This document shows positions 1 to 34,989 of a stretch of 64,000 nucleotides of DNA, piece after piece (within the stretch, counting starts at the first letter, position 1; every line of letters starts with the position of its first letter). Made by a program: the position numbers and the translations under genes. Below the pieces are notes generated by a model that saw only the letters and a list, made by a program, of their open reading frames with translations, did not search any database and was not told where the DNA came from. The DNA comes from Blastocladiella emersonii ATCC 22665 (Eukaryota > Fungi > Blastocladiomycota), in the NCBI GenBank assembly GCA_025594325.1, contig JANHCV010000002.1, positions 2,418,001 to 2,482,000 on the forward strand, given 5' to 3'.

Positions 1-2148
1 ATCGAGACCATCTACAAGTTCTCAGACACGACAAACTCGGGCCGACTTACTACCACGCCTACTACTCCTGGGCTACAAAAGATTTGCGGCGAAACGCGTG
101 CGTTCCTGTTCGAGGGCGTGCTCCAAGATATCGACATGCACAACTGTGCGCCAACCATCATCTACCAACTGGCTCGTCACTACGGCCTTGAGCACCCGCT
201 CTTGACAGAGTACATTCAGAATCGAAGCCTGGTACTGGATCGACTTGGGATGAGTAAGACTGATTTCTTCACTGGCGCATTCCACAAAAAGTGCCCGTCG
301 GAACTCCCTGCGGACTACAAGATGTTCCATGCGTTCCTGTACAACGTGGTGGTGCCCAAGTTCCAAGAGATGCATCCAGACGTGTGGGCCATGTCGTCGC
401 CAAAGCATCCCAATCGCCAGGGCTCGTTCCTGTCGTTCATCTACCAGTGCGTCGAGTGCAAGGTTCTGCTCCACGCCAAAGACTTTTGCGCCTCGCGTGA
501 TATCAAGGTCGCGGTTCTCATGTACGACGGCATGATGGTCCGTGCCTCGGATCAGATCAACGAGCAGTTTATGGCCGACCTCGGTGCGTACACGCTCGAA
601 AAGACGGGTTTTGATATCAAGTGGGCCGAGAAACCCATTGTCGCGCCCTGTGCCATTCCAGAGCCCGAGGAAGAGGAGGATGAGAAGACGCCCGAGGAGG
701 AAATCTCCGAGTTCATCATCAACGAGTTCGAAACCAAGGGCTACGCCAAAGACGGCGACACGATCTACGCTGCATCCGAGGCCAATCCATTCTACTACGA
801 ACCGCTGATGACGGTGGCAGAGTACACGTCATACCTGCTCGACGAAGTCTTTATTCGGTACTTCAACAAGAATGCGCACAAGTACGCTCGCCATGTTGCT
901 GCTCGTCTCGGCCACGGCTCAAAGCACATCCGCCAGTACAAGCCGAATCGCAGCCTGATCGCATTCAAGAACGGAGTTCTGTTCACAGGCACGAAGCGCA
1001 ATCGCCAGTGGGGGCTTTACAGTTTCGAAGATATTGAGAACGACCGCGAGCGATTCGAACGCGAAGTTTGCGGCGGATGCCCTGTGGCATGGTCGTACAT
1101 TGACAACGAATTCGACTTTAGCATTCCGCGCTCGGAATACGACAACCTCGACCTCGGCCCGTACCGCGACGTTCTCGATCTACAGATGGGCGAGGACCCC
1201 GAGGCAATCAAACAGTACATCATGCTTGCGTTCGGCCGTTCATGCTTCCCTGTAGGCGAGCTCGACAACTGGCGTCTTTGCCTCATTACGTGGGGCGAGT
1301 CGGGTACAGGCAAGACTCTGACAATGGATCTGCTCAAGGAAATCCACGGAATCCAGCGCATGAGTATCATGGAAAGCGGGGCGAAGATGACGCCGTACAC
1401 AATCGGTTACGTGCGCGAAAAGCCATTCTGGATTCTCCAGGATGTGGACAAGGACGTGATTGCCAAACTTGGTCAGTCGCTGTTCAAGAACGCATCTGAG
1501 GGCGGCGGTCTCATGGGCGGCATGAAGCATCGCGACGAAGACACCAAGCAGTTTACCACCCATATCATGATGACGCTCAACTACCTCGTACAGTTCCAGG
1601 AAGAAAGTGGCGAAATCTCTACTCGAATGGTCATTGCCCATTTCAAGAACAAGCCGGCTCGCAAGGACGACAAGATTTTCAAGCGAATCGTGGACAAGTA
1701 CCTGATCAACATTATCGTCACGGGTCTTTCGGCGTATCATTCGACTCTGGATCACCTTGACGCGAACCCAGAGCAGACCTTCCGCGATGATGTGCTGAGT
1801 CCATTCTTCAAGCAATCCAACGAACAGGCGCGTGTGCTTAATGACGTTTATGGCAAGGCGATCCTGGCACAGGACTCGGGGTTCGTGGTCACTCAAGACC
1901 CGGCCGACTACGTGGGACTGGACGAGATTCAGAACGCGGGCAATGTCTCGATTTCCGCCAAGTGGAACGACGAGCTCATGGCAGCGATTGGACTGAAGGC
2001 CGATCGCATCAAGGTGTGTCGGAACTGTGGAAAGAAACACGTCAAGGGGTGCTGTGCAGACTACAGTCGTACGGCCCGCTCTTCAAAGCGAGTGGTGACT
2101 GGAATCCGCCGCGCCCGTTTCTCAGATGGCATGGACGACGACGACTGA
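1..2148 (+). CDS. TVpol (family A polymerase-like/primase) fused to D5/SF3 helicase; viral or Polinton-like replication protein, 5'-truncated by the window edge
   Basis: Frame 1 is open from base 1 (IETIYKFS...SGRL...GLQKICGETRAFLFEGVLQDIDMHNCAP), upstream of the called GTG at 118. Motifs: PolA-like motif A DIDMHNC (127-147), motif C LMYDGMMV (~517-540), D5-N-like IAFKNGVL, Walker A GESGTGKT (1294-1317), Walker B-like ILQDVD, motif C MTLN, C-terminal CxxC...CC. Intronless for over 2.1 kb, with less GC3 bias than the host genes. Confidence 0.85.
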   Translation: METIYKFSDTTNSGRLTTTPTTPGLQKICGETRAFLFEGVLQDIDMHNCAPTIIYQLARHYGLEHPLLTEYIQNRSLVLDRLGMSKTDFFTGAFHKKCPSELPADYKMFHAFLYNVVVPKFQEMHPDVWAMSSPKHPNRQGSFLSFIYQCVECKVLLHAKDFCASRDIKVAVLMYDGMMVRASDQINEQFMADLGAYTLEKTGFDIKWAEKPIVAPCAIPEPEEEEDEKTPEEEISEFIINEFETKGYAKDGDTIYAASEANPFYYEPLMTVAEYTSYLLDEVFIRYFNKNAHKYARHVAARLGHGSKHIRQYKPNRSLIAFKNGVLFTGTKRNRQWGLYSFEDIENDRERFEREVCGGCPVAWSYIDNEFDFSIPRSEYDNLDLGPYRDVLDLQMGEDPEAIKQYIMLAFGRSCFPVGELDNWRLCLITWGESGTGKTLTMDLLKEIHGIQRMSIMESGAKMTPYTIGYVREKPFWILQDVDKDVIAKLGQSLFKNASEGGGLMGGMKHRDEDTKQFTTHIMMTLNYLVQFQEESGEISTRMVIAHFKNKPARKDDKIFKRIVDKYLINIIVTGLSAYHSTLDHLDANPEQTFRDDVLSPFFKQSNEQARVLNDVYGKAILAQDSGFVVTQDPADYVGLDEIQNAGNVSISAKWNDELMAAIGLKADRIKVCRNCGKKHVKGCCADYSRTARSSKRVVTGIRRARFSDGMDDDD

Positions 2149-2582
2149 ACCCACTACCAAATGGCCGCCTACTCTATCAACCTATTTTGTGTCTCTGTGT
2201 CTCTGTGTCTCAGCTATAATATTCTTTTCTATAAATTGAAGAAAAAAATAGTAACATACTAAGTATGTATGTTGTTTTCAGTTCAAAATACGAGTTACAA
2301 GTGAAATCGCAGGGACACTGGGTCACTGGGACAAGACTCACCAACCCTCATCGATACTCTCACTGACTGACTCACCATTTCCTCACCGCGCCGACGGATT
2401 CATAGACCGTTTGCCAATATCGCCCATGCCCGTCGTGGATTTCAATTCATCGAATAATCGCAAAGTCATTTCGAGACGCGTCGTGGATCAGATGACCGTC
2501 ACGTGGGCCGCGAGACACTTGGAGACGCGTCGACTTATCACGTGAGGACCCTCCGCCACTTCGTGGCTGCGGGCGCGCGCGC

Positions 2583-2619
2583 ATCCCTGGGGATGTTTCT
2601 GACGGACGTCCCCAGGGAT
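2583..2619. repeat. 11-bp inverted repeat ATCCCTGGGGA ... TCCCCAGGGAT with a 15-nt spacer
   Basis: Read directly at 2583-2593 and 2609-2619. Confidence 0.9.
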
Positions 2620-2661
2620 AGACCTAACCACATCTACCTCTATAGCCATTTAATCCTATTC

Positions 2662-2687
2662 TGAAGTATCCTTATAAGGATACTTCA
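2662..2687. repeat. Perfect 26-bp palindrome TGAAGTATCCTTATAAGGATACTTCA
   Basis: The first 13 nt (tgaagtatcctta) are the exact reverse complement of the next 13 (taaggatacttca). Confidence 0.95.
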
Positions 2688-2695
2688 CTCATGTA

Positions 2696-3819
2696 GTGCA
2701 TGGGCGAGCCGCCGAGAACAAACATGTGCGAGTCGTGGATCACGAGCGAGTTTGTGGCCATTTGGTCGAGTCCCGCGGCCAGCGACTTGTCAATGGTCGC
2801 AGTCACGGGCGGCGTCCCCTTGTCGATGGCCACGTGCTTGAGCAGCGGCTGCGCGTAGCCAAACACGATCAGGTACCGCACGCTGCCGGGCGCCGAGTAA
2901 ACGGCCGACTGGAAGTCATCCCGCTTGAACGACAAGGTGTGCAGGTACCGTGCCCACGTGCGGGGCAGAAAGCTGAACACCCAAATGTCCGCGAGACGGT
3001 TGTTGGTGCCGTTGTTGCCGCCGACCAGTACCAGCCGGTTTGCGTCGAACCGGGTCAGACTCGCCCACGCGCGCGGCGGCGGGCGATCGCCTGACGACGG
3101 CTCGATCTCAGTGAGGCCCGACTAGGGACGTCGCGTGTGGGTCAGCTACTGAACGGATGCGGACGACGGCAGAGAGCGCGGGTATACCTTGTCAAACCGC
3201 CACAAGGTTGACGTGACGCTCGTCCAATTGCCAAAGACGTAGACCGCCGGGTCCGAGGAAAGCGAAGAGGTCGGGTCAAGCGGCACAAATGTCGCGGCCC
3301 ACCCCGGGTTCAGAATCCGAAGCGAGGCATTGGACGTGATGGGCTGCGAGACCGTCTCGACCGCCTCGACCGAAGTCGCGCGCAGGAAGTTGGGCACGCG
3401 GTAGTGCTGAACGGAACCGTCTCGGGATTGAGTCCCGTGAAAAGGTGCACCTCGTAACCGCCCGAGGCACTCGGAAGCGCATAAGCGGGCATGAAGCTGT
3501 CGGTGGACGGCAGCCTGAAAGGAGCCGGTGCAACGGCGTGCGATAAGGGATCAGAGAGGTTAGCGATCGGCGAAGCCAGGTCGACGATGGCCACGTCGTT
3601 GAGGTCAATGGGCTTCCCCGTCGTGAGCTGGCGCCCGCCAAACACGTAAATCTTGCGCTCGCGCGGAAGGCACAGCGTCGTCGGGTGGATGAAGGCGGTA
3701 GTGCGCTCGGCAGTGATGCGCACGTTCTCCGGCCACGCACCGCGCACGGCGGGCGCGGGGACGACCGCTACGAGCGCGAGAAGGGCGACCAGGGCAGGGA
3801 CGAGTCGGACGTGCTTCAT
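2696..3819 (-). pseudogene. Signal-peptide Kelch-repeat protein, frameshifted and 3'-truncated at the element junction
   Basis: Signal peptide MKHVRLVPALVALLALVAVV. Kelch motifs IYVFGG, VYVFGN, LVLVGG...DIWVF...W and MFVLGG. Intron ~3188-3122 (GTATAC...GCTGAC...CTAG). Apparent 1-nt frameshift near 3410. The reading frame runs into the palindrome and stops in mid-repeat. Confidence 0.7.
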
Positions 3820-3843
3820 AGCAACAAGAGCAGTGTGACAATT

Positions 3844-5430
3844 CTAGTGTCCCAAGGATCCGAGGGAGGGAGAGAGCGCGCGAGCGAGCTTTACGGTCAA
3901 GTACGAAGGCTCGCCTTGCCGTTTCGACGCTGAGGTCGGCAATCTCTCATGCGCCGCCGGAATTGCGCCCATGAGCTCCAGCGCGCCCGCGTCAGACATG
4001 TCGTTGTTGGCGAGGTGGAGCTTGACAAGCGCGGGCGGAAGATGCGCTGCGATCGCCCGCGCGCCAGTGTCGCCAATGTTGTTGATGAAAAGACTAAGCG
4101 AGGCGAGACTGCGCGGGAGCACATTCGCTAGTGCGTCCAGCCTCGGTGACGGCAGGTTGGAGAGGTCGAGGGACTGCATTGATCCGTTGGCAAGCAAGTG
4201 GCGGGATTCCCATACGCGGCGATCGCCATCGACTAGGGATGGAACCGCAAGGCCCTACATACGCGCGAGATGTAAGGCGATGGTCGTGATCGGTGATGGA
4301 TGGGGTTTGAAAAAGCACCGCGAACAGGCTCTCGTTGACGGAGGTCGGGGCGGGACCAGCGGGTACAGGACGTGGATTCGATTGAGGAAAGGGCATGATC
4401 GGCGGCTTCGGGAGCATCAAGGCCGCGTCGACGGGGAAAACCGGCCCGAATGCTGGACCAGCACTGGGCATCGGCATGGGCATCGGCATGGATATCGGCG
4501 CGGTCATTGCCCTGGCCATCGGCATCCGATCGACAGCTGGATACGGGGCGTCGGGCTGCATTGAATAGCGTTAGTTTGAGGCGCTTCAGTCCAGGCGATA
4601 TCAAACAACGTACGGCGATGGTCATCGAACGGAAGCGGTGGCCAAGGACGTTGTCCACGCGGTCCAGCGAGACAGGAAAGCTTGGTCGCGAGGGCACGGT
4701 ATTCGAGGACTTGGTTTCAATGAGCGTAGAAAGGCTGCCAACAATTCCGGCGAAGCTGGGCCGCGCCAAAGGATCACGAGCCCAGCACGTTTCCACAAGC
4801 GACCAAAGCTCACGCGAGTAGCTGCGCGCGCCAACTGGTGCCGCCGGCCGCATGCCCTTGCAGATCCAGCACATGATGACGTCCGCGCCAACATTATTGT
4901 TTGCAAATGGAATCATGCCGGCGACCACCTCGTAGCAGACCATGGCGAAAGCGAAAACGTCCGGCGCAAAGTGCCACTTGGAATCGTGAACCGTCCGCTC
5001 AGGCGCGAACCAGCGCGTGTTCCCAACTTCGCCTGGCTGAAAAATCCCCAAGTGACCAGTTCCGTTGTTTCCAATCATGCGCGCAAGGCCAAAGTCGGCC
5101 ACGACTCGCAGAGCAAAGGTGCCGACCGCGCCGTCGCCAAGGCGCTTCACGTAAGGGTTATTTGTGCGTTCCCGATGCATGATGCTTTGGCGACACGCTT
5201 AAGCGGAGAGCACTCTGATTGAGAGGCTCGCCGCAGGGCAGGGTGAGCAGGAGGGACGCGCCGCGCCACGCGGGTGCTCCCCATGTGACGGTTCCCCACT
5301 TGAGCCAGCCAACGCCTTGCGCACGGAAGCCGGCTCGTCCCTCTCCCTCTCTCGTAACGATCGGCTTCCATGTATCTGCACCGCTCCACTCGCTGCAATG
5401 AATGCTTCATCATGAGAACCTTCCATCGCC
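3844..5430 (-). pseudogene. Decayed TKL-type protein kinase with C-terminal RNI-like leucine-rich repeats
   Basis: ADFGLAR, GNTRWFAPE, DVFAFAMVCYE and CWARDPLARPSF motifs (4233-5180). The catalytic loop is degenerate (MHRERTNN) and there is no intact N-lobe. A Pro/Met-rich linker precedes the LRRs LSLFINNIGDTGARAIA and LHLANNDMSDAGA (3844-4197). Confidence 0.6.
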
Positions 5431-9235: not shown

Positions 9236-10800
9236 TTAGTAGGGTGTCCAGCGTACAGCACGGTCGGTCGAAGGGGTTCGAGGGGATACAGCGGGGGAAG
9301 GGAAGAGCGACGTGCAGAGCGTAGGGCCCAGGGTGACGGCGATGCCGGCGTCGGCCGCACACTCGAGCAGCTTGCTGAGGCTGGTCTCCTCGATGTACAG
9401 CGTCTGGAGCATGGGCGACTGGGCGAGCGGCGACGCGGCCAGCGGCGGCGACGGACGCGTGACCAGGTCGAGCACAGTGAGCGGGACGCCGCTGGTCTCG
9501 GAGGAGTCAGCGGCACGGCTCCAGTTGATCACGTCGGCCACGATCCCGGCGCTGTCGGGCAACATAGCGGGCGCCGAGTCCGGGTCCGAGGCAGCAGGGC
9601 TCGCCAGAATGTCGGCCGGCGAAGCAACCATGGGCGGCGGCGGAGGAGGCGCCGAGCCGAACGGATCGGGCAGCCACGGATCCGCAGACTCGTCGCCGCA
9701 CCAAGGGGAGAGCAACCACGAGTCCCACACGGGCTCCTGCTGCTGCTGCGGGCCGTCGGCCACGAGTTCAGAGGCGAGCGCGGGCGACGGCGAGGGCGGC
9801 GATAGCGGTGCAGGAGACGTCGACAGGACACGAGCCGCCTCCGACCGCCGTCGCGTGCGCGGCCGAGATGACGGGGCAGGTTGCGGTTTCTGCTGCTGCT
9901 GCTTGCCGCGGCGGCGACGGGTGGACGCCTGGCGCGGCGGGACGGACGGCGTGTCGAGCGGGTCTACGGCGTCGTCCGCGGCCTCGACCATGTCAGGCGC
10001 GACGCCGAACGCGTCGAGCGAGAGCGGGTACGGGAGGCCGGCAGGCACGGCATCGGGCGCGAGCCGTTCGAATGCCGAGTTGATGGTGTTGAACCCGATC
10101 TCACGGACGAGCACCAGGATGAGCGCCGCGCCGGGAGCAACAGGCGCGGTCGGCGCAACCGCCGGGAGCAGGGCGGCGACGGTGACCATGAGGTTGGGGT
10201 CGCGCGCGGGCGGGTCCTTGGCCAGCTCGCACAGGAACGCGAGCGCGCACGAGCCCGCGTTGCGGCGCAGGTGGTCGATGAAGTGGTCGCTAGTTACATG
10301 GGATACATTGCATGGAGTTGCATCAAGTGAGTGCCACGGTGCATGGAGCGCGGCGTGGGATTGGGGAGCGAGAGTGGACGAGGCGTCGGCGCAAAGCATG
10401 GCGCGAAGCATGGCGCGAAGCCGCGAGACCGCGAAGCAGGGCGCGACGGCGAGCGATCGGGGTTGCAGAGGACCGTACCGGCGGTTCGTCCGCGACAAGC
10501 ACGACGAAACGCACACGTACGGCAGCGTGTCGCTCGCGTGCGCCGTCTGGAAGTGGCGCGCCGCGTCGTTGGTCCGGTTGCTGCATCGCAAGGGAGAGTC
10601 GGGTCAGCCCAAGCCGCATCGCGTCGCGGCACGACAGTGAGCAACGTACAACGACAGCGCGCACGACGGGCAGGTGGTCGGGCGCGAGTTGTCGGCCACG
10701 CACTTGATGGCCATGCTGCCGCTGGCCGTGAGCGTGAAGTGCAGGTCCGGGTAGGTTGCGCGTAGGCGGTCGAACGACGCGCGGACTAGAGGGCAAGCGA
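9236..10800 (-). CDS. C2H2 zinc-finger transcription factor (two fingers), paralog B; start not resolved
   Basis: Splicing introns 10649-10581 and 10478-10290 gives CPSCALSFNRTNDAARHFQTAH and CVSSCLSRTNRRDHFIDHLRRN. Intron positions and phases match paralog A. Confidence 0.75.
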
Positions 10801-12384
10801 TGGGGACGAGGGAGTTGTGAGTATGGTGAATCGGCCGTCGTCGGGCTGCAGGCGCCGACAGCGAGAGTCGGACGGTGATGGCCGAGGGTCGAGCGGCCAC
10901 CATTCGCTGCACTCTCGCCCGGCGGTGTGGCGGACAGCGCCGAGCGACGGCGATCAACGCGCAACGCAGTGGCGGCGGGCCCGGCACGAGATGGGTGGCG
11001 AGGGTCAGAGGGAGAAGGGCGCACCACGCGGAATGGCCATGAAGGCGGCGAGCTGGTCGGGCTGCAGATGCATACTCGCGATCGGTGGACAGCAAGTCAA
11101 GGACGCGATGCGATGCGAGCAAGGTGCAAGGAGAGAGAGTGTGAGATGACGAGCGGGATGCCGCTGTTGAGAGGCGCTCGGTTGCGTGCTGGCTGGGGAG
11201 AACAGACTGGCCGCGATGGCCAAGGCGACAACGACCTCGTCCACGCCGCAGCCCACGCGCGCTTGACCATGGCCCGCTCGCCTTGACCTCCGTCGATGCG
11301 AGCCCCCAATCCCTCCGCGATTGCATCTCCCGTGCATTCTCATCGAACACTGCCGTTCGAAGCGAGCAGCGGCCAACCGACCCGCTCGTGCCCCACGCCG
11401 GCCAGCTGCCTGCGCGCGGTCCCGGGCGGCGCTCTTTCGCCGTGGAATTCCACGCGTGCGGGCGGCTGCGGTGGATCATGAAACTGCACCTGCCGAACCT
11501 GGACGTGCCGCTCCACCGCGGCCGTCACCGTCTACGTTGTCTCGGACACGAACGTGTGAGCGCAGGCGCACGCGGAGGACAACGGCAGGCCGAGGTCGCG
11601 TGGGTCCGCATTCGACGCGACCCGGTGAAGTGGACATGGACCAGCAACTGGGCTCGCGTGCGTGTCGCGAGACTCGCGGACAACGGTGCGTGGAACAGTA
11701 AAGCTGGATCGAGCAACGTGGATGCGAACAGTGAAACGAGGCGCGTCGAGGACGGTGACACGGAAGCGGGTGTGATTTTCCATCGAAGTGAGCGCCCAGA
11801 CTGCACCGCATCGCCAGATGAGTGGAAGCGGCGCTAGGTCAGCGTGAGGTGCATGCGCGCCGGCCGCCGTGAGAAGCAACATCCAAGCTATGATATGAGA
11901 AATTCAGCGAGCGGCCGAGACGGGTCCCACGTCGCTTTTGATTGTTGAGCTCGTCGCGCGTTGACCTGCAGAGCGGTCGTCCGCGCCGGTCGCGTGGCGA
12001 AACGCGTCTCGCACGCGCCACGTGACTGTCTCACAGCTCCCACCCGGCGCACGCGGTGCGCTCCGGACGCGCAACGTGGTCCTTCCATCCGGGCGCAGCG
12101 GCGAGTCCACGAACGGGGGTTCCGCCACTTCGACGGCGGCGGCCAGAAACGTTGGCTGATGTTCGCATGATCAGTATCGTGATTCCGGCGGGATCCGACA
12201 GCAACGCGTGGGCACGCTGCCAATTCGTGCGCGTTGGGGGCCTCGCGCTCGCGTTCTTCCGTACTCTTTCCTGTTTCACGACTGTACTGCACCGCATCAT
12301 TGCCGTCCACCGCAGCATCGAGCGTGTGATGGGCCTCCGCCGCAGATGCAGCGCGCCCGGGAGAACAGTACCCGCTGCCCGCTC

Positions 12385-26037: not shown

Positions 26038-29000
26038 TCATGCCATGCGGCGGCGGTAGTACATGACACCACCACCGATCGCGCCGACACCGGCGAGACC
26101 GCCAATGACACCGCCGACGATGGCGCCCGTGTTGGAGCCCGCGTCCGTGGTCGGCGTCGCCGTCGGCGTAGCCGTGCGCGTCGCGGTCGCGGTCGACGTG
26201 GCCGACGACGTGGTCGACGACGACGAGGACGGCGTGTCCTGGACGGCAAAGTCCGAGTACATGGGGCACGAGCACGTCACCGTGGTACCCGAGGCCGTGG
26301 TCGTGCAGCCCGAGTTGGACCACGCGGTACCCGACCAGTACACGCACTGCTGCGTGTTACCGGTGCTGGCCGGCGACACGTTGTCGACCTGGAACGTGAG
26401 CGACATGGACCGCCCGTCGAGCGCCGCCGTGGTGGACCCGCTCGTGTACACGTTCACGTTGAGCACCTGCGACAGGAGCTTCTTGCCGCCCGTCGACTGC
26501 GTCGCCCGCTGCTGGCGCCACTGGACCACGTGCGCGTCGTAGCACCCGGCCGTCACCGTGTTGGGCAGCGTCACCGTGTAGTTGCCGACGACACGCGGGT
26601 CGTCGCCCGACGACGAGCCCGTCGCGACGATGCGGCGCACCGAGCCCGTGAACGTGCCGAGGTCCGACGTCAGCGACTGCGTGGCGCCCGAGGCCGCGCA
26701 CGTGTCGCCAGCGACCGTACCGGCGAGGAGCGACGAGATCATGGACCGGACCGTGTTCTCGTCGGCCGTGGCGCGGCGGAACACGGGCGAGAAGCGGTTG
26801 ACGCTGAGGCTGCGGCGCTTGAGCGAGACCGTCGACGCGTCGAGCGCCAACTTGAGCAGCTGGTCCACGACGCCGAGCGCCTTCTTGGTCACCACGGGGT
26901 CGGCCGAGATGATGTTGCCGGCCGCGTCGCGCGAGCAGCCCGCCACGAGCGAGTTGACGAGGTTGAGCGTCGACGCCATCGTCGTAGCGTCAAACGACGA
27001 GAAGTCGACCGTCGCGAGCGCCGAGGCCGCGCGGACCACGAAGCCCGAGTCGACGACCGAGTTGGCCGCGCGGTCGAGCATGATCTGGTTGACCCAGCCC
27101 TGCGCCTGCGCCTGGTACGCCTTGAGCTGCGTGAGCTGCGCCGCCGTGAGCTGCGACGCCCACGCGCTGATCTGGATCGTGTCGAGGAAGCCCGTGATCT
27201 CGCGCAGCGCGGCATCAGCCGAGCTGACGAGCAGGGCCTGGATGCGGTTGACAAAGTTGCCGGCCTCGGCGATGAGCTGGTCACCGTTGAGCGACGGCTT
27301 GACCACCGTCACCGTGGCGTTGGCGCGGGCCGACGACCCGAGCGCGTCCGTGAGGATCACAAACGCCTTGGTCGCCGTGGCGGGGAACCGGACGCCGTCA
27401 ATGGTCGCGGGCGACTGCTGGAACGCGAAGATCGAGTCCTGCTCGCGCTTGGTCGCCGTATCGTTGGCCGAGTACCCGAACGTGTACGCGTACGGCGGGA
27501 CACCGCCCGACCAGCCCGTCGACGCCAGCGAGAACGAGTCGAGGTTGGCGCGGCCCGAGGCCGTGTCGGTCACCGTGAGCTGGTTGGCCGCGATGGCGTT
27601 GGCCACCGAGAGGACACCGCCCGTGGGGAGCGAGGCCGTCTGCAGCTGCACGTCCGAAATGTACGTCTGGCCGTTGACCGTCACCGTGCAGCGGAGCTTG
27701 TAGTTCTTGCCGGGGAGCAGGTCGCCGGGGCCGAACGAGTACGTCGAGCCCTTGGTCGAGCGCTTGAGGACGAGGTCCGTGTCGACCGAGTCGGGCGACA
27801 GCGACCACGCGTACGCCGAGGGCGACAGCGTTTTGTTGGTGGCCACGTCGACGACCGTGATCCAGAGCGTCGGGGCGCGGCCCGCCGAGACCTGCGCGTC
27901 AGCGGGGAAGCGCTGGCCGCGGACGCGGGGGACCGTGCCGGCGAGGGCGTTGAGCACCGTGAAGTCGGACGCGTAGCGGTCGCCGTTGGCGTTGTCGATC
28001 ACGTAGACACCGTAGTAGTACTTGGTGCCGGCCGCGAGCGTGCCCGAGGGGATCGTGTACGAGGCGCCGATGTTGGACACGACGATGCAGTTGGTGTAGC
28101 CCGCCGCGCACTTGAGCCAGCTGTACGTGTACGACTTGGTCGCGAAGGCCGCGTCGGGGTCGTTGATCGTCGCCGTCAGCGTGTTGGCCGCCGACGCGCC
28201 GCAGTCCTGCCAGTTGCCGCCGTCCACGTTGACGTTGAGCGGGGCCGCCGTGACCGAGAGCACCGACTCGGTGCGCACCTCGATGCTGTTGTACGTGACG
28301 ACGCAGTCGAGGTAGAAGGTGCCGTAGCCGAGGTTCTTGGGCTTGAACGAGATGCTCGACCGGTTGGCGCCCTTGGCCTCGAGGTTGGTGAAGCTGACCA
28401 GGTTGGCCGACGAGTCGTACAGCTCCCAGCGGTACGACAGCGTCACCTTGGTTATGTCGATGTTGGCGCACAACGGGAACTGCACCACGGCCTGCGCGTT
28501 GACCTGCCCGCCGAGCCGCACCGACTGCTTGGACGCCGTCTGGTACACGTTGGGGAACACCGTCGACACGCGCTGCACCGTGAACGCAGCGCTCGCGCCG
28601 TACGTGGTGCCGAACTTGGCGTAGCCCTCGTAGCCCGTGACGCGGATCTTGAAGTCCGTGCCCGTCACGACCCAGCTCGCGGGCACCTTGAAGTCGAGCT
28701 TCTTGCTGCCCGAGGGACCGAAGATACCGGCCACCTGCGCCGCCAGCGACGTGTCCGTGCCCTCGTACGTGACAAAGTAGGTCACGTCGTTGCCGCGCGA
28801 GCCCGAGAGGTCGAACCGGATGTCCGACGTGTCACACCCAATGACGCGCTTGGGCGCGTTGATGGCGATGACGGGGGCCGTCGGCGTGTACGTCGGCTGG
28901 CTCGTGGGCACCAAGATCGACTGGCCGGTTGTGAACGTCGGGATCGACGTCTTGGTGGACGAGCCGCCGCCCGAGCCGCCCGTCGTCGTCGTGGCGTGGT

Positions 29001-32000
29001 CCGTGGTCTTGGTCGTGCCGCTGGACGACGACGACGAGGAGGAGGAGGACGAGGATGAAGACGACGATGAGGAGCTCGAGGACGACGAGGACGAAGAGGA
29101 GGAGGAGCTCGACGACGACGACGAGCTCGAGGCGTGCGACGACGTAGACGAGGTCTGCGGAGCCGACGACGAGGTAGTCGCGGCGCGAGTCGTGGTAGTG
29201 GTCGTGGTGGTGGTCGAGGTCCCGGCCGAGGGCTGGGCCTGGACAGCAAAGTCGGCCGCGGACATGGGGCAGTTGCAGCTGATGTTGGAGCCCGACACCG
29301 TCTGGGTGCAGCCCTGGCTGGTCCACGCGTTGCCGTTGAAGTAGGCACACTTGTTGGTGAAGCCAGCGGGGGCGGCCGTGACGCCCGTCGCTGTGTACTT
29401 GACGCGGCGCGCCGACGACGCGGCAATGGGCGTGGACTGGCCCGACGGGAACACCTCGACGCCGAGCACGCTCTTGGACGTGATGCGGTTGGCCGCCACC
29501 GTGTTGCCCGACTTGGACTTCCACGACACGAGCTGCGTGTCGTAGCAGCCCTGCGGGATCGAGTCGGGGAGGACCACGTTCGAGAAGTCGCCGACGGTGC
29601 GCGCCGAGTCGCCCGACTTGGCGCCCGTCGCCACGATGCGGCGCGCGTTGCCCGTGAAGGCGCCGCCCGTCTTGGGCGCCACCGTCTGCGCCGAGCCCGT
29701 CGCCTTGCACGAGTCGGCCTTGACCGACGCCGCCATGAGCGAGCGCACCTGGGTCGTCAGCGTGTCCTTGTTGGCGGCCGCGCGCTTCTCGAGGTGCAGC
29801 ACCAGGTCCGACGTCTCGTCCGAGGGCGCGCGGCGGAGGAGCATCGCCGACTGGTCCGCCTGGTTGAGCAGCTGGCCAATCACCTCGGCCACCTTGTCGG
29901 CGACCGTGGGGTCCGCCGACACGTCCTTGCCGTCGCGCGACTTGGCGGCGCCCGTGATGGCCGAGTTCACGATCGCCAGGGCGCCGTCAATGGTCGCCTG
30001 GGACGCCGACGAGAAGTCGGCGTTGGCGAGCGCCGAGGCCGACTTGGCCGCGAACCCGGCGTCGACGCGCTTCGGGTTGGTGGCGAGCGTCGTGAGGAAG
30101 CCCTGGGCCTGGGCCTGGAGGGCGAGGAGCTGCGTCTTCTGGGCGTCGGTCGGGTTGGCCGACGACAGCACGTTGAGGTCAATGAGCGACGTGAGCGTCG
30201 AGAGCTGGATCATGGCCGTGTCGGGGCTCGACAGCAGCGACTGGATCTTGGTCGCGAGCGCCTGCGCCTGCGTGATGATGTTGGCCACGTTGATCGTGGG
30301 CGCCGTGATCGCCAGGTCCACCTCGGTGCGCTTCTCCGACCCGAGCGAGTCCGTGACAATGACAAACGCCTTCTTGGCCGTGGGCGGGAACAGGATGCCC
30401 GTGAGCGTCTGCGCCGACGACTGGTACGTGATGAAGTTGTCCTCGGACACGGCGGGCGTGACCGTGGGGTCGACCGACGTGTACCCGAACGTGTACACGT
30501 ACGGCTTCTTGCCGCCCGACCAGTCGGCCGCCGTCAGCTTGAACTTGTCCGTGTTGGCGAGGCCGCGCGCCGTGTTGGCGTTGGCGCCCGTCTCCTGGTT
30601 CTCGACCTTGAAGGTACCGCCCGACGGGATGCCGGCCACCTTGAACTGCACGTCGCCGAACGCCGTGAGGCCGGCGCTGGTCGTGATCGTGCACCGGAGC
30701 GTGTAGTCCTTGCCGGCCGTCAGCGAGTCGGGCGAGAACTCGTAGAAGTAGTCGCCGTCCTTGTCCGTGTCGATGGTGAGCGTGTCCTTGGACTTGGGCG
30801 ACACGGTCCACGCGATCTCGACGTCGTCCACGTCAATCTCCGTCGACGGGCTCGTCGAGTCGTCGAACACCTGCGCGAACAGCGTCACGCCGTCCTTGAC
30901 CGTGACCGAGTCCGTCGACGGGAACCGGCTCACGACGACGCGGGGCACCACGACGCTCGAGCCCTCGAGGAACACGTAGTCGGTCGAGTACCGCAGCGGG
31001 TTGGCCTTGTCCTGGACGAGGATCGCGCCGTACTTGGTGGTCCCGGCGGGGATCGAGCCGGCCGTGATCGTGTCCGAGTCGGTGCCGACTGCCTTGACCG
31101 TGCACACGTTGAAGTTGTAGTCATCGCATTCGAACCACGTCAGCTGGTAGTCGGACAGCGCCGGGTTGGCCGCGCGGTCGTCGTCGATGATCGTCACCGT
31201 CAAGGTGCGCGCAATCGACGTCGGGATCACCTGGTAGTTGCCGCCGTCAATGAACGCCGAAAGGAGCGAGCCCGAGACGCCGACGGGCAGGCTGGCCGTG
31301 ACCGTCTGGCCGTTGTACGTCGCCGACGCCGTGAGCGTAGTCACGCCGTAGCCAAACTGCTCGGCAGTCAGGAAGATGGACGCGGCCGTGTTCGAGTCGG
31401 CGCCGATGGTCGTCAGGTCGTTGACGACCTGGCCCGACGGCAGCGTGGCGCTCCACGCGATGGTCGTGGTGGCCGTGGTCGGGTCGACGCCCGTGCACGC
31501 GGCGAACGACAGGGCAAACGACGGGTTAAACTGGTCGCGCGGCGACACCTCGAACCCGGGCGTGTCAAAGTCAATGAAGGGCACGATCTGGCTCGACGAC
31601 TTGCGCGTGATGGTGATGGTCTTGGACGCAGAGTACTGGTTGGCGTACTCGTCGTACATGTCGGCGGCCGTGATGCGCAGCTGCAGCGGCGTGCCGAGGG
31701 GCACCCACGACTGCGGCACAATGAACTCAAAGTCCTTGAAGCCCGACGACGGGTACTGCGACGCAATGTTGCTGGCAATCGAGCCGTCCGACCCGAGGTA
31801 CTCGACGAAGAACGTCGGGTCGTTGGCCAGCGTGCCCGACAGGTCGTACTCGATGTCGTCCGTCTCGCAGTCGTTGATGAACATGGGCCCCGTCAGCACC
31901 ACGTACGGCGCCGAGTTGGTCTCCTGCGGCACCTCGTTGGCGACCGTCACCGTGGCCCCGACCGCGTACGACCGCGCCGTCAGCTGGGTCGTCGTAGCCG

Positions 32001-34989
32001 ACGCCGTGGTGGTAGTGGTGGTGGTCGTCGACGTGGCATCATCGGTAGACGTCGTCGACGTGGCCGCATCCGTGGTAGTGGTCGACGTGGCCGCATCGGT
32101 CGTCGTGGTCGACGTCGCCGCGTCCGTAGTCGTGGTCGTCGAGTCGGTTGTGGTCGTCGTGTCCGTAGTCGTCGCAGTATCGGTCGTCGTCGTGGTCGTG
32201 TCCGTGGTCGTGGTCGTGTCCGTGGTCGTGTCCGTCGTCGTGGTCGTGTCCGTGGTCGTGGACGTGTCCGTGGTCGTGTCCGTGGTCGTGTCCGTGGTCG
32301 TGGCCACCGACACCTCGTCGACGGCGCGGCGGTACACGAGGTGGAGGACCGTGGCCTGCTCGTGGGTGCGGAGGCCCTCGAAGTTGGACGACAGGTCAGC
32401 GAGGGCCGCGTCGCGGCGCGCCTCGACGCGCACCTTGGCGTCGCGCGACGAGGGCGTGCCGACCTGGGCGCCGTACGCCCACGCCATGGCCTCGGGGAGC
32501 ACCTGGACGCGGACGCCCGCCATGCGCGCGGCGCGGATCACGTCGTACGCGTCGAGCGCGGGCTTGGCGGCCGACTGGGCGCGGACCGCGGCAATGCCGT
32601 TGAGCTTGGCCATGGCCTCGTTCGAGACGAGGGGCAGGACGGCCGAGTCGACGGGCGAGGTGCGCTGGCGGAGCTTGAGCGCGTCGGTCGACGTCAGGTC
32701 TGTGTCAAAGTTGGGCAGGGCGTCGACGCCGAGGGCGAACGCGCCGGCCTCGGGGGCCGTGGCCGCGGCGCGCGCCAGGATCTTGGCGAGGTGAGCCTTG
32801 GGGACGACCGAAGACGGGATTGCGAGCACGAGCGAGCCCGTGGTGAGGCGGGACCCGGCCTCGAGCGCCTCCTCGACCGACGCGTCGGGGCGGTCGAGGA
32901 CCACAATCTGCCACGCGCGCGGGGTCCACTTGGCGTCGAGCCCGACGAGCTCGTCGTTGAGCTTCTCGGCCTCGACCGTGTTGGACGACGGCTTGACGGC
33001 GAGCACCACCTCGAGCCGGTGGTACTCGTTGAACTCGGCCTCGACCGCGTCGAGCGCCTTGGCGAGCACCGACCGCGGCACCTTGTCGGCGTCGTGCACG
33101 ATCACGAGCGAGATCATCTCAGCCGCCTGGCCGGCCTTGGCGGCGGCGCACGCGGGGGCCGCGCGCACCAGGTCGCCGAACACCTGCAGGTCCTGGACGC
33201 TGCGCTTCTTGATGGACGCCGAGGTCGCCGAGGGCGTGGTCACGCCCGTGCGGATCGTGCGGATCAGGGCAAACGAGAGCTCGTACGGGTCCTCGGTGTG
33301 GAACGTGGCGACGTCGGGCTTGAGCTGCTTGTCCTCGGTGAAGAGCGTCGCGGCCGCGTGCAGGATGACGGGCGTCTCCGACAGGACAATCTCGTGGAGC
33401 AGCGTCGAGTCGAACTCGGGCGACCCGATCACGGCGACGCGCGCCGCGGCCGGGTCCGTCAGGTACCCGACGACCTGCTTGGCGGCCAGCGCGGAACCGC
33501 GCACCTCGATGGCGAACTTGGTCCACGCCGACGCGCGCTGCTCAATGTACTTGATGGCGGGCACGCCGTTGACCTTGGTCTTGCCGTGGATCGGGCCCAT
33601 GAACGTGACGCGGAGCGTGGGCTCCTTGGTCGACCGGACAAAGTGCACGTTGTCGAGCGCGTCGCAGAACCCGATGAGCCCGCCGGCCGCCGACAGCTCG
33701 CCGAGGAACACGAGCTCGCGGACCGCGTGGCGCTTATCGGCAGCGCCGGCACCGGCGAACGGGTGGCGGAAGGTGCGGTAGAGGCCCGACGAGACCACGG
33801 GCAGGACGCGGACGGCGGCCGAGGGCTTGACGAGGTCGCGGTCCATGGTGGCGAGCTCCTCGGACGCGAACAGGAGCTCCTCGGCGAGCGCGATCGTCTT
33901 CTCGCGGAGGTGGTCCTCGGCGAGCGCCACGTCGTCCGTGAGCGGGGCCGACGTCTGCTCGGCGCTCTTGACGTCCTTGCCGAGCTTGGCGAGCGTGCCG
34001 CGGAGCGCCGCGTCGAGGCTCGGGCGCGAGACACCGACGACAATGTGCGAGGCCGAGCAGCGCGACCCGAGCGACTTGGCGGCCAGGTAGTCGTAGCCGG
34101 CGCCCGAGTTGGCGTCAAAGTAGACCAGGTCAAAGTCGGCGCGCGACAGGGCCTCGGCCACGGCCTTGGACCGGTCGAGCACCTCGGCGGCCGACGTCGG
34201 GCGGGCCGACGGCACCTTGCTGACCGTCACCGAGGCGCCGTGCAGGCGGTCGGCCGTGATGTCCTCGGAGGTGAACACGGTCACGTCGTGGCCCTGCTGC
34301 GCCACCTCGATGGCGGCCGCGAGACCAAAGTCGGTGGCCGAGGTCTGGAGCGAGTGCGCGTCGATGAACATGGCGACCTTGCCGGCGCGCTTGTCTGTGG
34401 GTCGTGGAAAGGTAGCTCGGGTGAGTGGATCTGCTCGGTGATCGAAGACCGAGGAGGAGAAGAGAGCGTACCAGTCGAGGAGGACGAAGCCGCGGCAACG
34501 ATATCCGCGTCGAGGTCGACGGCGAGCGAGCACGAGGGACCGGAGAAGCCAATGTCGCAGAAGCAGTGGCGGTTGATCATGATGCCGTTGCCGGAGCACT
34601 CACTGGCGGCGACGGGGACGGGGGCAGCGGGCCGTGGGGACGAGACGTCGACCTGCGGGGGTGGAGTGGCGAGGGCGGGGTGTCAGACGCAGAGTGGCGA
34701 GGGCGGGGTGTCAGACGCAGAGTGGCGAGGGCGGGGTGTCAGACGCAATGTCCTCGAGCGTGGGAAGCCGGGTAGTCCGTACCTTGGGCTGAGAAGAGGG
34801 AGAGTAGGACGAGAAGCCGGCGAAGATGAAGGCACCGGCGAGCAGCGGCAGGGCGAACCACGCGAGCATCTTGAGGCGCGAGGCCATGGCGTCGCGGCGG
34901 ACGACGTCGTTGTGGTTGTTGTTGACGCGGCTGTCGGGCAGCAGGGGCGCCTTGGCCGCGTCGGCACCGGCGGCACGAGCGGGGGCCAT
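26038..34989 (-). CDS. Giant (~2900 aa) membrane protein: signal anchor, EGF, GT-B-like, GT-A-like, Thr-rich stalk, REJ-GAIN/GPS, Ser-run, second REJ-GAIN/GPS, TM; join(34989..34783,34652..34472,34394..26038)
   Basis: Exon 1 has a hydrophobic segment LAWFALPLLAGAFIFAGF. Exon 2 has EGF-like CSGNGIMINRHCFCDIGFSGPSC. GT4-like QGHDVTVF, ELVFLGEL...FCDALD and E-x7-E; GT2-like ISLVIVH...LEVVLAV. Two GPS motifs: CAYFNGNAWTSQGC...CNCPMSAADFAV and CVYWSGTAWSNSGC...CSCPMYSDFAV. C-terminal TM GAIVGGVIGGLAGVGAIGGGVMYYRRR. Confidence 0.85.
31985..32305 (-). repeat. Coding Thr/Asp-rich (TTTD)n mucin-like repeat
   Basis: Repeated accacggacacg units encoding TTTDTTTDTTTDTSTTTD... between the GT-like and REJ regions. 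Confidence 0.85.
34664..34747. repeat. Three perfect 28-bp tandem copies (GAGTGGCGAGGGCGGGGTGTCAGACGCA) inside intron 1 of the giant gene
   Basis: Units at 34664-34691, 34692-34719 and 34720-34747; each contains a CTGAC branch-point-like motif on the minus strand. Confidence 0.95.

What the first reader, a model, noticed from the sequence alone, without database searches (positions are those of the whole stretch)
1..2148. TVpol-SF3 helicase fusion gene: endogenous Polinton-like or large DNA virus replication module in a fungal genome
Seen: an intronless ORF open from base 1, with GRL...LQ...R.FLF...DIDMHNCAP and LMYDGMMV upstream of a D5-type helicase (IAFKNGVL, ELDNW...GESGTGKT). Its codon usage is unlike the intron-bearing host genes. 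Established: PolA-related TVpol fused to an SF3 helicase is typical of Sputnik-type virophages, many Polinton-like viruses and Tlr1-type elements, and is not a cellular fungal gene. Inference: this is one end of an integrated virus-like element with an intact, possibly active replication gene, a group little described in early-diverging fungi.
Basis: partly seen in the sequence, partly recalled or inferred. Interest (0 to 1): 0.85.

Follow-up and report, generated by a model that had tools for sequence, protein, structure and literature searches.

The report
Integrated virus-like element's replication gene
The first 2.7 kb of the window is the right end of an apparently intact 16.7-kb Polinton-like (virophage-like) DNA element inserted into a gene of the water mould-like fungus Blastocladiella emersonii. 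Its replication gene fuses a small PolA-like polymerase (TVpol) to a D5-type helicase, which makes it a new member of a known kind of element.

Summary
Window 1-2148 (+) is one stop-free frame holding every quoted motif. The gene starts 219 nt upstream of the window and encodes 788 aa.

A confident model of the N-terminal 230 aa (pLDDT 94.7) matches family A DNA polymerases in the PDB. Its best matches are virophage replication proteins (Zamilon, TM 0.85). A profile of the protein family matches D5/NrS-1-type SF3 helicases (E 1e-40 to 5e-23). The TVpol-SF3 reading therefore holds.

The window comes from Blastocladiella emersonii ATCC 22665. The gene sits at the right end of a 16,716-bp element with:
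- perfect 524-bp terminal inverted repeats (right one at window 2164-2687), TG...CA ends and a 5-bp target-site duplication;
- an insertion point that splits a host Kelch-repeat ORF in frame;
- 12 open ORFs, including an rve integrase, an A32-type packaging ATPase, a fibre-like protein and an HNH endonuclease, but no protein-primed PolB.

The two capsid candidates could not be verified.

At least five replication genes of two types exist in the genome. Related, syntenic elements occur in Allomyces, where integrated Polinton-like viruses were already reported in 2021.

Verdict: real, apparently intact and recently integrated, and a new member of a known kind.

The parts
1..2148 (+). Replication gene, 3' 2148 nt of a 2367-nt intronless ORF (788 aa; the first 73 codons lie upstream of the window). 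It encodes a TVpol - D5_N-like - SF3 helicase - Cys-rich tail fusion.
   Evidence: Open frame. Start at L001 9461. Homologues only in Blastocladiella and Allomyces at high identity. 1269 representatives of the N-domain family in metagenomes and genomes.
1..645 (+). TVpol (minimal family A-like polymerase) domain, excluding its N-terminal thumb part, which lies outside the window. It has a beta-hairpin with R15, first palm strand LQDIDMHNCAP (D43, D45), helical fingers insert (R75, K86), second palm hairpin LMYDG (D176) and K211.
   Evidence: AF2 model pLDDT 94.7. Foldseek PDB best hits are Klenow, Bst, T7 and apicoplast PolA, E 2e-5 to 1e-3, TMq up to 0.60. BFVD best hits are Zamilon virophage replication protein (E 3e-16, TMq 0.85) and Qinghai Lake virophage helicase/primase/polymerase. 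Invariant residues come from alignments of 21, 56 and 122 sequences.
658..702 (+). Acidic linker (PEPEEEEDEKTPEEE) between the polymerase and helicase modules.
   Evidence: Translation. pLDDT drops here.
703..1257 (+). Region upstream of the helicase core, containing IAFKNGVL. It occupies the position of the D5_N domain.
   Evidence: PF08706 D5_N is found in 13 of 56 family members. The family profile aligns from about position 300 to vaccinia D5, ASFV C962R and 7ola primase chains. There is no direct Pfam hit for this protein.
1258..1800 (+). SF3 (D5/NrS-1-type) helicase core: Walker A GESGTGKT (1294-1317), Walker B WILQDVD (1429-1449), motif C Asn in TLNY (1573-1584).
   Evidence: PHROG 'DNA primase' helicase parts, E 6e-6 to 1e-5. 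DUF5906 E 0.018 for this protein and 41 of 56 relatives up to 1.8e-20. Family profile against PDB: 6k9c 1e-40, 7ola 7e-33, C962R 3e-27, D5 5e-23. G437, K438 and N527 are invariant or nearly so.
2017..2055 (+). Cys-rich C-terminal motif (CxxC...H...CC), a probable zinc knuckle conserved in the Blastocladiomycota homologues.
   Evidence: Seen directly in P0004, P0005, P0006 and P0007 and in the window protein. The function is inferred.
2164..2687 (.). Right terminal inverted repeat, 524 bp, 100% complementary to the left TIR (L003 17101-17624).
   Evidence: the repeat finder I1. Homology with two other genomic copies stops exactly at 2687.
2583..2619 (.). Pair of 12-nt palindromic motifs ATCCC(Y)(R)GGGAT forming a hairpin-capable unit inside the TIR.
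   Evidence: 8 hits with at most 1 mismatch in L003, all inside the element, against 0.07 expected. Only these two occur in the 64-kb window.
2662..2687 (.). 26-nt perfect palindrome forming the extreme terminus (TG...CA).
   Evidence: Sequence. Copy 2 carries matching substitutions on both arms, which keep the palindrome.
2688..2692 (.). Right copy of the 5-bp target-site duplication (CTCAT on the + strand, ATGAG in L003 orientation).
   Evidence: The same 5 bp abut both TIR ends.
2688..4471 (-). Host Kelch-repeat gene (annotated to 2672, i.e. reading into the TIR), interrupted by the insertion. It is the neighbour, not part of the element.
   Evidence: Called gene with Kelch Pfam hits. The ORF phase across the TSD is the same as that of a 163-codon ORF on the far side of the element, L003 17625-18116. 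That far-side ORF has a TM-like segment.

Best explanation
Window 1-2687 is the right end of a 16,716-bp integrated Polinton-like virus (PLV)-type element in the nuclear genome of Blastocladiella emersonii ATCC 22665.

The ORF at 1-2148 is the element's only recognisable DNA replication gene. It is a single polypeptide made of three parts:
- a minimal family A-like polymerase (TVpol), predicted to act as a primase-polymerase;
- a D5_N-like region and an SF3 hexameric helicase of the D5/NrS-1 type;
- a small Cys-rich tail.

The inferred mechanism is that the helicase unwinds the element's DNA while the fused TVpol primes, and perhaps extends, DNA synthesis, as proposed for Sputnik V13-type proteins.

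The element's rve integrase inserts the linear genome through its TG...CA termini and makes a 5-bp target duplication. The A32-type ATPase, a fibre-like protein and two capsid-candidate proteins would package the genome.

Shown here: the folds and families of the replication protein, integrase and ATPase; the TIRs and TSD; the in-frame host-gene split; multiple copies; and purifying selection between copies. Inferred: the enzymatic activities, particle formation and present-day activity.
For: Identity of the locus:
- Window base 1 equals L001 9680 on contig JANHCV010000002.1.

TVpol domain:
- AF2 model pLDDT 94.7.
- PDB Foldseek hits are almost exclusively family A polymerases; three chains of human Pol alpha, a family B enzyme, are the exception.
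- The best BFVD hits are roughly 700-1275-aa virophage and giant-virus replication proteins, TMq 0.77-0.85.
- R15, D45, D176 and K211 are invariant across 56 sequences.

Helicase:
-.

Element:
- 524-bp perfect TIRs and a 5-bp TSD with TG...CA ends.
- rve integrase (Pfam E 3.7e-9, above cut-off) and Pox_A32 ATPase (E 3.7e-9, above cut-off).
- HNH endonuclease.
- GC about 53% against a host at 65-72%.
- All 12 ORFs are open.

Copies and relatives:
- A second copy is 98% identical up to the same terminus.
- A third copy has the same backbone but a different helicase half.
- pN/pS between copies is 0.16 for rep and 0.09 for the fibre gene.
- The Allomyces macrogynus element is syntenic at 27-71% aa identity over 9 genes.
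- Integrated PLVs with MCP, ATPase and helicase were reported for A. macrogynus (PMC7805220).
Against: - The capsid genes are not demonstrated. orf404 and orf397 have no Pfam, NCBIfam or PDB hit. The AF2 model of the Allomyces homologue failed (pLDDT 32.5), so its Foldseek hits mean nothing.
- No maturation protease was found.
- The window protein itself reaches Pfam DUF5906 only at E 0.018, so the helicase assignment rests on the family profile and the motifs.
- The RxxxK fingers motif given for TVpol is not literally present. The conserved pair here is R75...K86.
- No close relative was found in IMG/VR or JGI metagenomes. Only 21-25% identical ones appeared, so there is no evidence for a free viral form.
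- No expression data were available.
Confidence: 0.88

Rival explanations
1. A capsid-less self-synthesising DNA transposon. The element moves with its rve integrase and replicates with TVpol-helicase, but it makes no particles, and orf397/orf404 are not capsid proteins.
For: No capsid family hit in any library and no usable model. TIRs, a TSD and multiple genomic copies are also what a transposon shows.
Against: An intact A32-type genome-packaging ATPase, 99-100% conserved between copies, has no role in a transposon. It sits directly upstream of two roughly 400-aa ORFs. The same order, ATPase followed by two such ORFs, recurs in the Allomyces element, and an IMG/VR viral contig likewise has two ORFs (348 and 487 aa) next to its ATPase. 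Pfam also fails to recognise the ORFs in the capsid position on that viral contig, so the lack of hits is uninformative. PMC7805220 reports MCP genes in A. macrogynus elements.
Confidence: 0.08
2. A fragment of an integrated giant virus (Nucleocytoviricota, e.g. Mycodnaviridae-like) rather than a small autonomous element.
For: Giant viruses of zoosporic fungi exist, and some of their contigs carry PLV-like integrases (PMC13533422). Some BFVD structural matches are giant-virus proteins from Pyramimonas orientalis virus and Catovirus.
Against: The unit is bounded by perfect TIRs 16.7 kb apart, with a TSD and host coding sequence in phase on both sides. GC returns to host level immediately outside. 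No giant-virus hallmark gene is present.
Confidence: 0.02
3. A domesticated or cellular fungal primase-helicase gene, or an assembly chimera or contaminant.
For: The gene is annotated as an ordinary hypothetical protein with introns. Homologues at high identity are restricted to Blastocladiomycota.
Against: Copies lie at non-orthologous loci on at least five contigs. GC3 is far from the host's. The gene lies inside TIRs next to integrase and packaging ATPase genes. The exact junctions with a TSD, and the same terminus at three loci with different flanks, argue against chimerism.
Confidence: 0.02

Closest known systems
Sputnik/Zamilon-type virophage replication protein (V13-like; TV-Pol fused to a D5-like helicase; Iyer, Abhiman & Aravind 2008, PMC2579912)
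   Same: Same two-module architecture and similar length (788 aa against 778 aa for Zamilon V6BPG7). The N-domain models superpose at TMq 0.85, E 3e-16. The fold is PolA-like with a conserved Arg hairpin and two palm Asp. The helicase is D5-like.
   Different: Sequence identity is only about 20% in the structural alignment. There is no tblastn or phmmer-level link to any named virophage. The fingers motif is R-x10-K rather than RxxxK. An extra Cys-rich tail is present. The host element has an rve integrase; by my own recollection, untested here, Sputnik has a tyrosine integrase. No virophage-type MCP was detected.
Integrated Polinton-like viruses of Allomyces macrogynus and Spizellomyces punctatus (Bellas & Sommaruga 2021, PMC7805220)
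   Same: The same fungal phylum in the case of Allomyces. Nine genes are syntenic and homologous with the A. macrogynus element around AMAG_06705-06710 (27-71% aa). The S. punctatus element shares the replication protein and integrase at 32-34%.
   Different: This is a different genus, not reported in any paper I could search. Here the complete bounds, TIRs, TSD and open ORFs are defined. No MCP-level similarity to the S. punctatus locus was found.
Mavirus-type endogenous virophages and Polintons/Mavericks
   Same: An rve-family integrase, long TIRs, short TSDs (5-7 bp were reported for PLV-type insertions in PMC7805220), an A32-like ATPase, and size within the 15-40 kb quoted for Polintons.
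   Different: There is no protein-primed family B polymerase, which is the defining replication gene of Polintons and mavirus. No adenain-like protease was found.
NrS-1 phage primase-polymerase helicase domain and poxvirus D5 / ASFV C962R helicases
   Same: The helicase half of the family profile aligns over about 290-390 residues (E 1e-40 to 5e-23).
   Different: By my own recollection, untested here, those proteins carry an archaeo-eukaryotic primase (AEP) N-domain. Here the N-domain is PolA-like, and no AEP match appeared in any search.

Membership tests
TV-Pol (Iyer et al. 2008, PMC2579912) | [quoted passage not shown] | tested here: met
   R15 (SGRLTT) is invariant in the 56- and 12-sequence alignments and nearly invariant in the 122-sequence one. 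It lies between strands E5-6 and E17-18 of the model.
TV-Pol (Iyer et al. 2008, PMC2579912) | RRM-like palm with two highly conserved metal-binding aspartates | tested here: met
   D45 (strand 41-46) and D176 (hairpin 170-181) are invariant in all alignments.
TV-Pol (Iyer et al. 2008, PMC2579912) | Helical fingers (HTH) inserted after the first palm strand, with a conserved Asp and an RxxxK motif | tested here: inconclusive
   A helical insert spans residues 49-165 and carries near-invariant R75 and invariant K86. Their spacing is 10 residues, not 3. Foldseek gives no residue mapping onto the PolA O-helix.
TV-Pol (Iyer et al. 2008, PMC2579912) | N-terminal thumb of two antiparallel helices | not tested
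   This part (73 aa plus) lies upstream of the window and could not be submitted for modelling.
TV-Pol (Iyer et al. 2008, PMC2579912) | Structural relationship to family A polymerases and to the Sputnik-type protein | tested here: met
   The top 50 PDB hits are family A polymerases, apart from three chains of human Pol alpha (family B), E down to 1.9e-5. The Zamilon replication protein matches at E 3e-16, TMq 0.85. Sequence profiles alone found nothing significant.
SF3 helicase, D5/NrS-1 (DUF5906) clade | Walker A, Walker B and motif C (Asn), plus profile similarity to D5-like helicases | tested here: met
   GESGTGKT, WILQDVD and N527. Family profile against 6k9c 1e-40 and 8apl 5e-23. DUF5906 is found in 41 of 56 relatives, but only at E 0.018 for this protein alone.
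Polinton-like virus (PLV) | A32/FtsK-HerA-type packaging ATPase | tested here: met
   Pox_A32 E 3.7e-9, 36.9 bits against a cut-off of 22.8.
Polinton-like virus (PLV) | Double jelly-roll major capsid protein and a penton protein | tested here: inconclusive
   The candidates are orf404 and orf397, directly downstream of the ATPase and conserved in Allomyces. There are no family or PDB hits. AF2 gave pLDDT 32.5, and hhalign was negative.
Polinton-like virus (PLV) | Terminal inverted repeats, integration with a TSD, and a primase/helicase-type rather than pPolB replication gene | tested here: met
   524-bp TIRs, 5-bp TSD, and a TVpol-SF3 helicase.
Polinton/Maverick sensu stricto | Protein-primed family B DNA polymerase together with an rve integrase | tested here: not met
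   The rve integrase is present. No PolB appears among the 12 ORFs.
Virophage (Lavidaviridae-type) | Virophage-type MCP and dependence on a co-infecting giant virus | not testable with these tools
   No virophage MCP similarity was detected. Dependence is a biological property.

The most novel reading that the evidence does not exclude
The element could be a provirophage-like partner of the recently described giant viruses of zoosporic fungi (Mycodnaviridae). On this reading it is an intact, recently integrated PLV whose morphogenetic genes are driven by their own short conserved upstream motif: a T-run, about 6-16 nt, then (G/T)GTAA next to the ATG, shared with the Allomyces element. The replication gene and its divergent neighbour instead carry a TATA-like motif. 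This would be a host - giant virus - small virus triangle in fungi, analogous to Cafeteria-CroV-mavirus.
Probability: 0.2. Interest if true: 0.85.

Novelty: new member of a known kind. Interest (0 to 1): 0.52.

Why it matters
Integrated Polinton-like viruses have been surveyed at scale in protists, but Fungi were explicitly excluded from that survey (PMC10120064). For fungi, only brief mentions exist, for Allomyces and Spizellomyces (PMC7805220).

This locus gives a complete, apparently undecayed example in a laboratory model fungus:
- exact ends and target duplication;
- a disrupted host gene that marks the insertion as recent and probably polymorphic;
- several copies under purifying selection;
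- a natural swap of the helicase half of the replication gene between otherwise 97-99% identical backbones.

Giant viruses that persistently infect zoosporic fungi have now been described (PMC13533422). Such elements are therefore obvious candidates for the small-virus partner in that system. The locus also shows that the public annotation of this genome mis-models viral genes, with spurious introns and unannotated ORFs.

Tried and rejected
- Sequence-only identification of the N-domain failed. Pfam, PHROGs and PDB phmmer/hmmsearch gave nothing significant. Only one of 21 members touched DNA_pol_A, at E 0.046. The fold comparison was needed.
- An AEP-primase reading of the N-domain was considered and dropped, because no AEP hit appeared anywhere.
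- Capsid identification failed by every route tried: Pfam, NCBIfam and PDB; tblastn against the phage collection; IMG/VR pattern scan; an HMM against the S. punctatus locus; hhalign against ORFs of IMG/VR contig L011; and AF2 of the Allomyces homologue with a 3-row alignment (pLDDT 32.5). The Foldseek result from that model is discarded as meaningless. The B. emersonii capsid candidate itself could not be modelled, because it lies outside the window and is not in the protein collection.
- orf453 looked by eye like it might end in tyrosine-recombinase-type motifs. Pfam, NCBIfam and PDB searches gave no support, so it stays unassigned.
A single-protein metagenome scan found nothing.
- Tblastn of the replication protein against 50,697 phage records found no match.
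- Supplement files of PMC7805220 do not list the Allomyces accessions. I could therefore not confirm that AMAG_06710 is the MCP those authors meant.
- The review PMC11426020 is not held.
I have not reused or repeated those positions and give counts only.
Full report
**1. Observation**

Frame 1 of window 1-2148 is stop-free for 715 codons and ends at a TGA. All motifs still quoted in the finding are present at the stated order. These are LMYDGMMV (nt 517-540), IAFKNGVL (958-981), ELDNW (1258-1272) and GESGTGKT (1294-1317).

The region has 51-56% GC, whereas the rest of the window has 60-76%. GC3 of the ORF is 0.71, against 0.91-0.96 for long host ORFs.

**2. Source and full gene**

The closest proteins are annotated hypothetical proteins of Blastocladiella emersonii ATCC 22665 and of three Allomyces species.

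The annotated product H9P43_002717 maps the window to contig JANHCV010000002.1 (2.84 Mb) of GCA_025594325.1. Window base 1 is base 9680 of locus L001. Upstream, the ORF continues for 219 nt to its first ATG, giving a 788-aa protein.

The public gene models (485 and 580 aa) cut spurious introns into a continuous ORF.

**3. The N-terminal domain is a TVpol**

Sequence libraries do not recognise it.

An exhaustive HMMER search with window residues 1-230 found 1269 cluster representatives at E below 1e-3. Most are 680-800 aa long, with the match near their N-terminus, so they share the same architecture.

With 122 of these as the alignment, AlphaFold2 gave a model with mean pLDDT 94.7 and pTM 0.89.
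- Against the PDB, the 50 best hits are family A DNA polymerases (Klenow, Bst, Taq, T7, the apicoplast polymerase, DpoZ), apart from three chains of human Pol alpha, a family B enzyme. E-values go down to 1.9e-5 and TM reaches 0.60 on the query.
- Against BFVD, the best hits are full-length replication proteins of small viruses and giant viruses. They include the Zamilon virophage DNA replication protein (778 aa, E 3e-16, TM 0.85), the Qinghai Lake virophage 'helicase/primase/polymerase', and proteins of Pyramimonas orientalis virus and Catovirus.

The features that Iyer et al. (PMC2579912) use to define TV-Pol can be read off the alignments and the model:
- two invariant palm aspartates (D45 on the first strand, D176 in the LMYDG hairpin);
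- a helical fingers insertion between them, carrying R75 and K86.

The literal RxxxK spacing is not present. The thumb lies outside the window and was not modelled.

**4. The C-terminal half is a D5/NrS-1-type SF3 helicase**

On its own, the protein gives PHROG 'DNA primase' helicase-part hits at about 1e-5 and DUF5906 at E 0.018.

Of 56 full-length family members, 41 hit DUF5906 (best E 1.8e-20), 15 hit the VapE-like domain and 13 hit D5_N.

The family profile matches several solved helicases over about 290-390 residues:

| Target | E-value |
|---|---|
| NrS-1 primase helicase domain (6k9c) | 1e-40 |
| 7ola | 7e-33 |
| ASFV C962R | 3e-27 |
| Vaccinia D5 / mpox E5 | about 5e-23 |

These names are as returned by the tool.

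The Walker A Gly-Lys and the motif C Asn are invariant or nearly so. A Cys-rich tail (nt 2017-2055) is conserved among the fungal homologues.

**5. The element**

L001 and a locus obtained by walking upstream (L003, the reverse complement of record 2401074-2421595) show a low-GC block. It is bounded by a 524-nt, 100% complementary inverted repeat at L003 909-1432 and 17101-17624.

The element is therefore 16,716 bp, and the right TIR is window 2164-2687. Its ends read TG...CA, and the last 26 nt form a perfect palindrome. The same 5 bp (ATGAG in L003 orientation) flank both ends.

The insertion interrupts a host ORF. The Kelch-repeat gene on the window's minus strand reads into the TIR and stops there. 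A 163-codon ORF with a TM-like segment begins exactly at the other TSD copy, in the same codon phase. I compared the two pieces apart and did not join them.

All twelve ORFs of at least 117 aa are open:

| ORF | Assignment | Evidence |
|---|---|---|
| rep | Replication gene (TVpol-SF3 helicase) | see sections 3-4 |
| orf453 | Unassigned | none |
| rve | rve integrase | Pfam E 3.7e-9; IS481-like at 1e-21 in NCBIfam |
| fibre881 | 881-aa fibre-like protein with 3.1 copies of a 168-nt repeat | |
| orf259 | Unassigned | none |
| orf172 | Unassigned | none |
| A32 | A32-type packaging ATPase | Pfam E 3.7e-9, above cut-off |
| orf397 | Capsid candidate | none (see below) |
| orf404 | Capsid candidate | none (see below) |
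| orf120 | Unassigned | none |
| HNH | HNH-AP2 endonuclease | E 2e-10 |
| orf117 | Unassigned | none |

There is no PolB, no recognisable protease and no tRNA.

**6. Capsid candidates**

orf397 and orf404 follow the ATPase directly. The same order and both proteins are conserved in an A. macrogynus element, at 49% and 54% identity (AMAG_06710). An IMG/VR viral contig (L011) that encodes a distant relative of the replication protein has the arrangement ATPase, 348-aa ORF, 487-aa ORF, Ulp1-like protease. Pfam does not recognise its middle ORFs either.

I could not demonstrate a jelly-roll fold. The capsid assignment therefore rests on position, size, conservation and the statement in PMC7805220 that A. 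macrogynus elements carry MCP, ATPase and helicase genes.

**7. Copies and their state**

- A second copy (L002, contig 8) is about 98% identical over the shared 12.4 kb and ends at the same terminal base, with a different flank.
  - Its replication, fibre, orf259, orf172 and ATPase genes are open. orf453 is open but only 77% identical.
  - Its integrase is broken by three frame-shifting indels and one stop (counts only).
- A third copy (L006, contig 9) has the same backbone at 97-99%, with an open integrase.
  - The helicase half of its replication gene is replaced by a divergent version (64% aa overall). This matches the second replication-protein type found on three contigs (P0006, P0166, P0167).
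  - orf259 shows one frame change near its end.
- The genome thus holds at least five replication genes of two types.

Between copies 1 and 2, pN/pS is 0.16 for rep and 0.09 for the fibre gene. Synonymous divergence is uneven between genes (0.006 to 0.06). This fits independent integrations from a population evolving under selection and recombination, rather than decay of one insertion.

**8. Distribution**

High-identity homologues are confined to Blastocladiella and Allomyces. Spizellomyces punctatus has a 32-34% identical replication protein and integrase.

Environmental relatives found in JGI metagenomes and IMG/VR are only 21-25% identical and come from AT-rich contigs. Close relatives were not found there.

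**9. Literature**

- TV-Pol and its fusion to D5-like helicase in Sputnik V13: PMC2579912.
- Integrated PLVs in A. macrogynus and S. punctatus, with TSDs of 5-7 bp for elements carrying rve or tyrosine recombinases: PMC7805220.
- The large survey of endogenous PLVs and virophages excluded Fungi (PMC10120064).
- Giant viruses of zoosporic fungi, some with PLV-like integrases on their contigs: PMC13533422. It mentions neither Blastocladiella nor virophages.
- No paper in the library combines Blastocladiella with virophage. In a broader search combining Blastocladiella emersonii with polinton, maverick, virus-like or endogenous-viral terms, none of the 15 best-ranked of 906 papers mentions B. emersonii.

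**10. Mechanism (inferred)**

The SF3 helicase would unwind the linear genome while the fused TVpol primes, and possibly extends, synthesis, as proposed for the family in PMC2579912.

The repeated 12-nt palindrome ATCCC(Y)(R)GGGAT is a candidate protein-binding site for replication or regulation. It occurs twice in each TIR and once in each of the two divergent intergenic regions.

The rve integrase explains the TG...CA ends and the 5-bp duplication. The ATPase, fibre and capsid candidates would form and fill particles.

**11. Verdict**

The element is a Polinton-like virus-type insertion rather than a Polinton proper or a large DNA virus. It is a new member of a known kind, and is notable for its intactness, its recent insertion into a host gene and the modular exchange within its replication gene.

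Noticed in passing
window 2583-2594 and 2608-2619; L003 977, 1002, 4268, 6564, 9680, 12739, 17520, 17545: A 12-nt palindrome ATCCC(Y)(R)GGGAT occurs 8 times (at most 1 mismatch), only inside the element, against 0.07 expected. There are two per TIR and one in each divergent intergenic region (rep/orf453 and fibre/orf259). It may be a binding site for a replication or regulatory protein.
   Followed up: partly
L003 upstream of ORF starts (e.g. 9628-9649, 10806-10825); L004 945, 1813, 5952, 7046, 7595, 9973, 11254: Morphogenetic-module genes share a T-run, about 6-16 nt, then (G/T)GTAA just before the ATG. There are 7 distinct sites in the A. macrogynus element against 0.5 expected, and 3 strict sites in B. 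emersonii. The replication gene and orf453 instead share a CGATAA...ATAAAA (TATA-like) motif 45-60 nt upstream. This suggests two promoter classes.
   Followed up: partly
window 2662-2687 and L002 12414-12439: The terminal 26-nt palindrome differs between two copies by matching substitutions on both arms, so the palindrome is kept.
   Followed up: partly
L006 9533-11890 compared with L003 1448-3814: A third genomic copy has a 97-99% identical backbone, but the helicase half of its replication gene is replaced by a divergent version (64% aa overall). This is a natural module swap between the TVpol and SF3 helicase halves.
   Followed up: partly
L003 4485-5846 (orf453): This is the most variable gene of the element (77-87% aa between copies whose neighbours are 97-100% identical) and is absent from the Allomyces element. 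Its C-terminus looks by eye like tyrosine-recombinase boxes, but no profile or PDB search supports this.
   Followed up: partly
window 2688-4471 (-) and L003 17625-18116: A host Kelch-repeat gene is split in frame by the insertion. The public annotation calls the two halves as separate genes, and the first runs into the TIR.
   Followed up: partly
L001 711-1472, 3648-6293; L003 12583-15022: The public annotation of GCA_025594325.1 calls no gene for the A32 ATPase, the 881-aa fibre-like ORF or the two capsid candidates. It also inserts introns into the replication gene and orf259.
   Followed up: yes
P0004 (Allomyces arbusculus KAJ3360474.1, 1206 aa): This gene model appears to carry a partial duplicate of the N-domain ahead of the full replication protein, plus a roughly 330-aa C-terminal extension. 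It is probably a fused mis-annotation or a rearranged element.
   Followed up: no
window 26041-34599 (-) and 58873-63999 (-): These are very long host ORFs (2853 and 1709 codons, GC3 0.95-0.96) with long antisense shadow ORFs. They appear to be ordinary high-GC host genes and were not examined.
   Followed up: no
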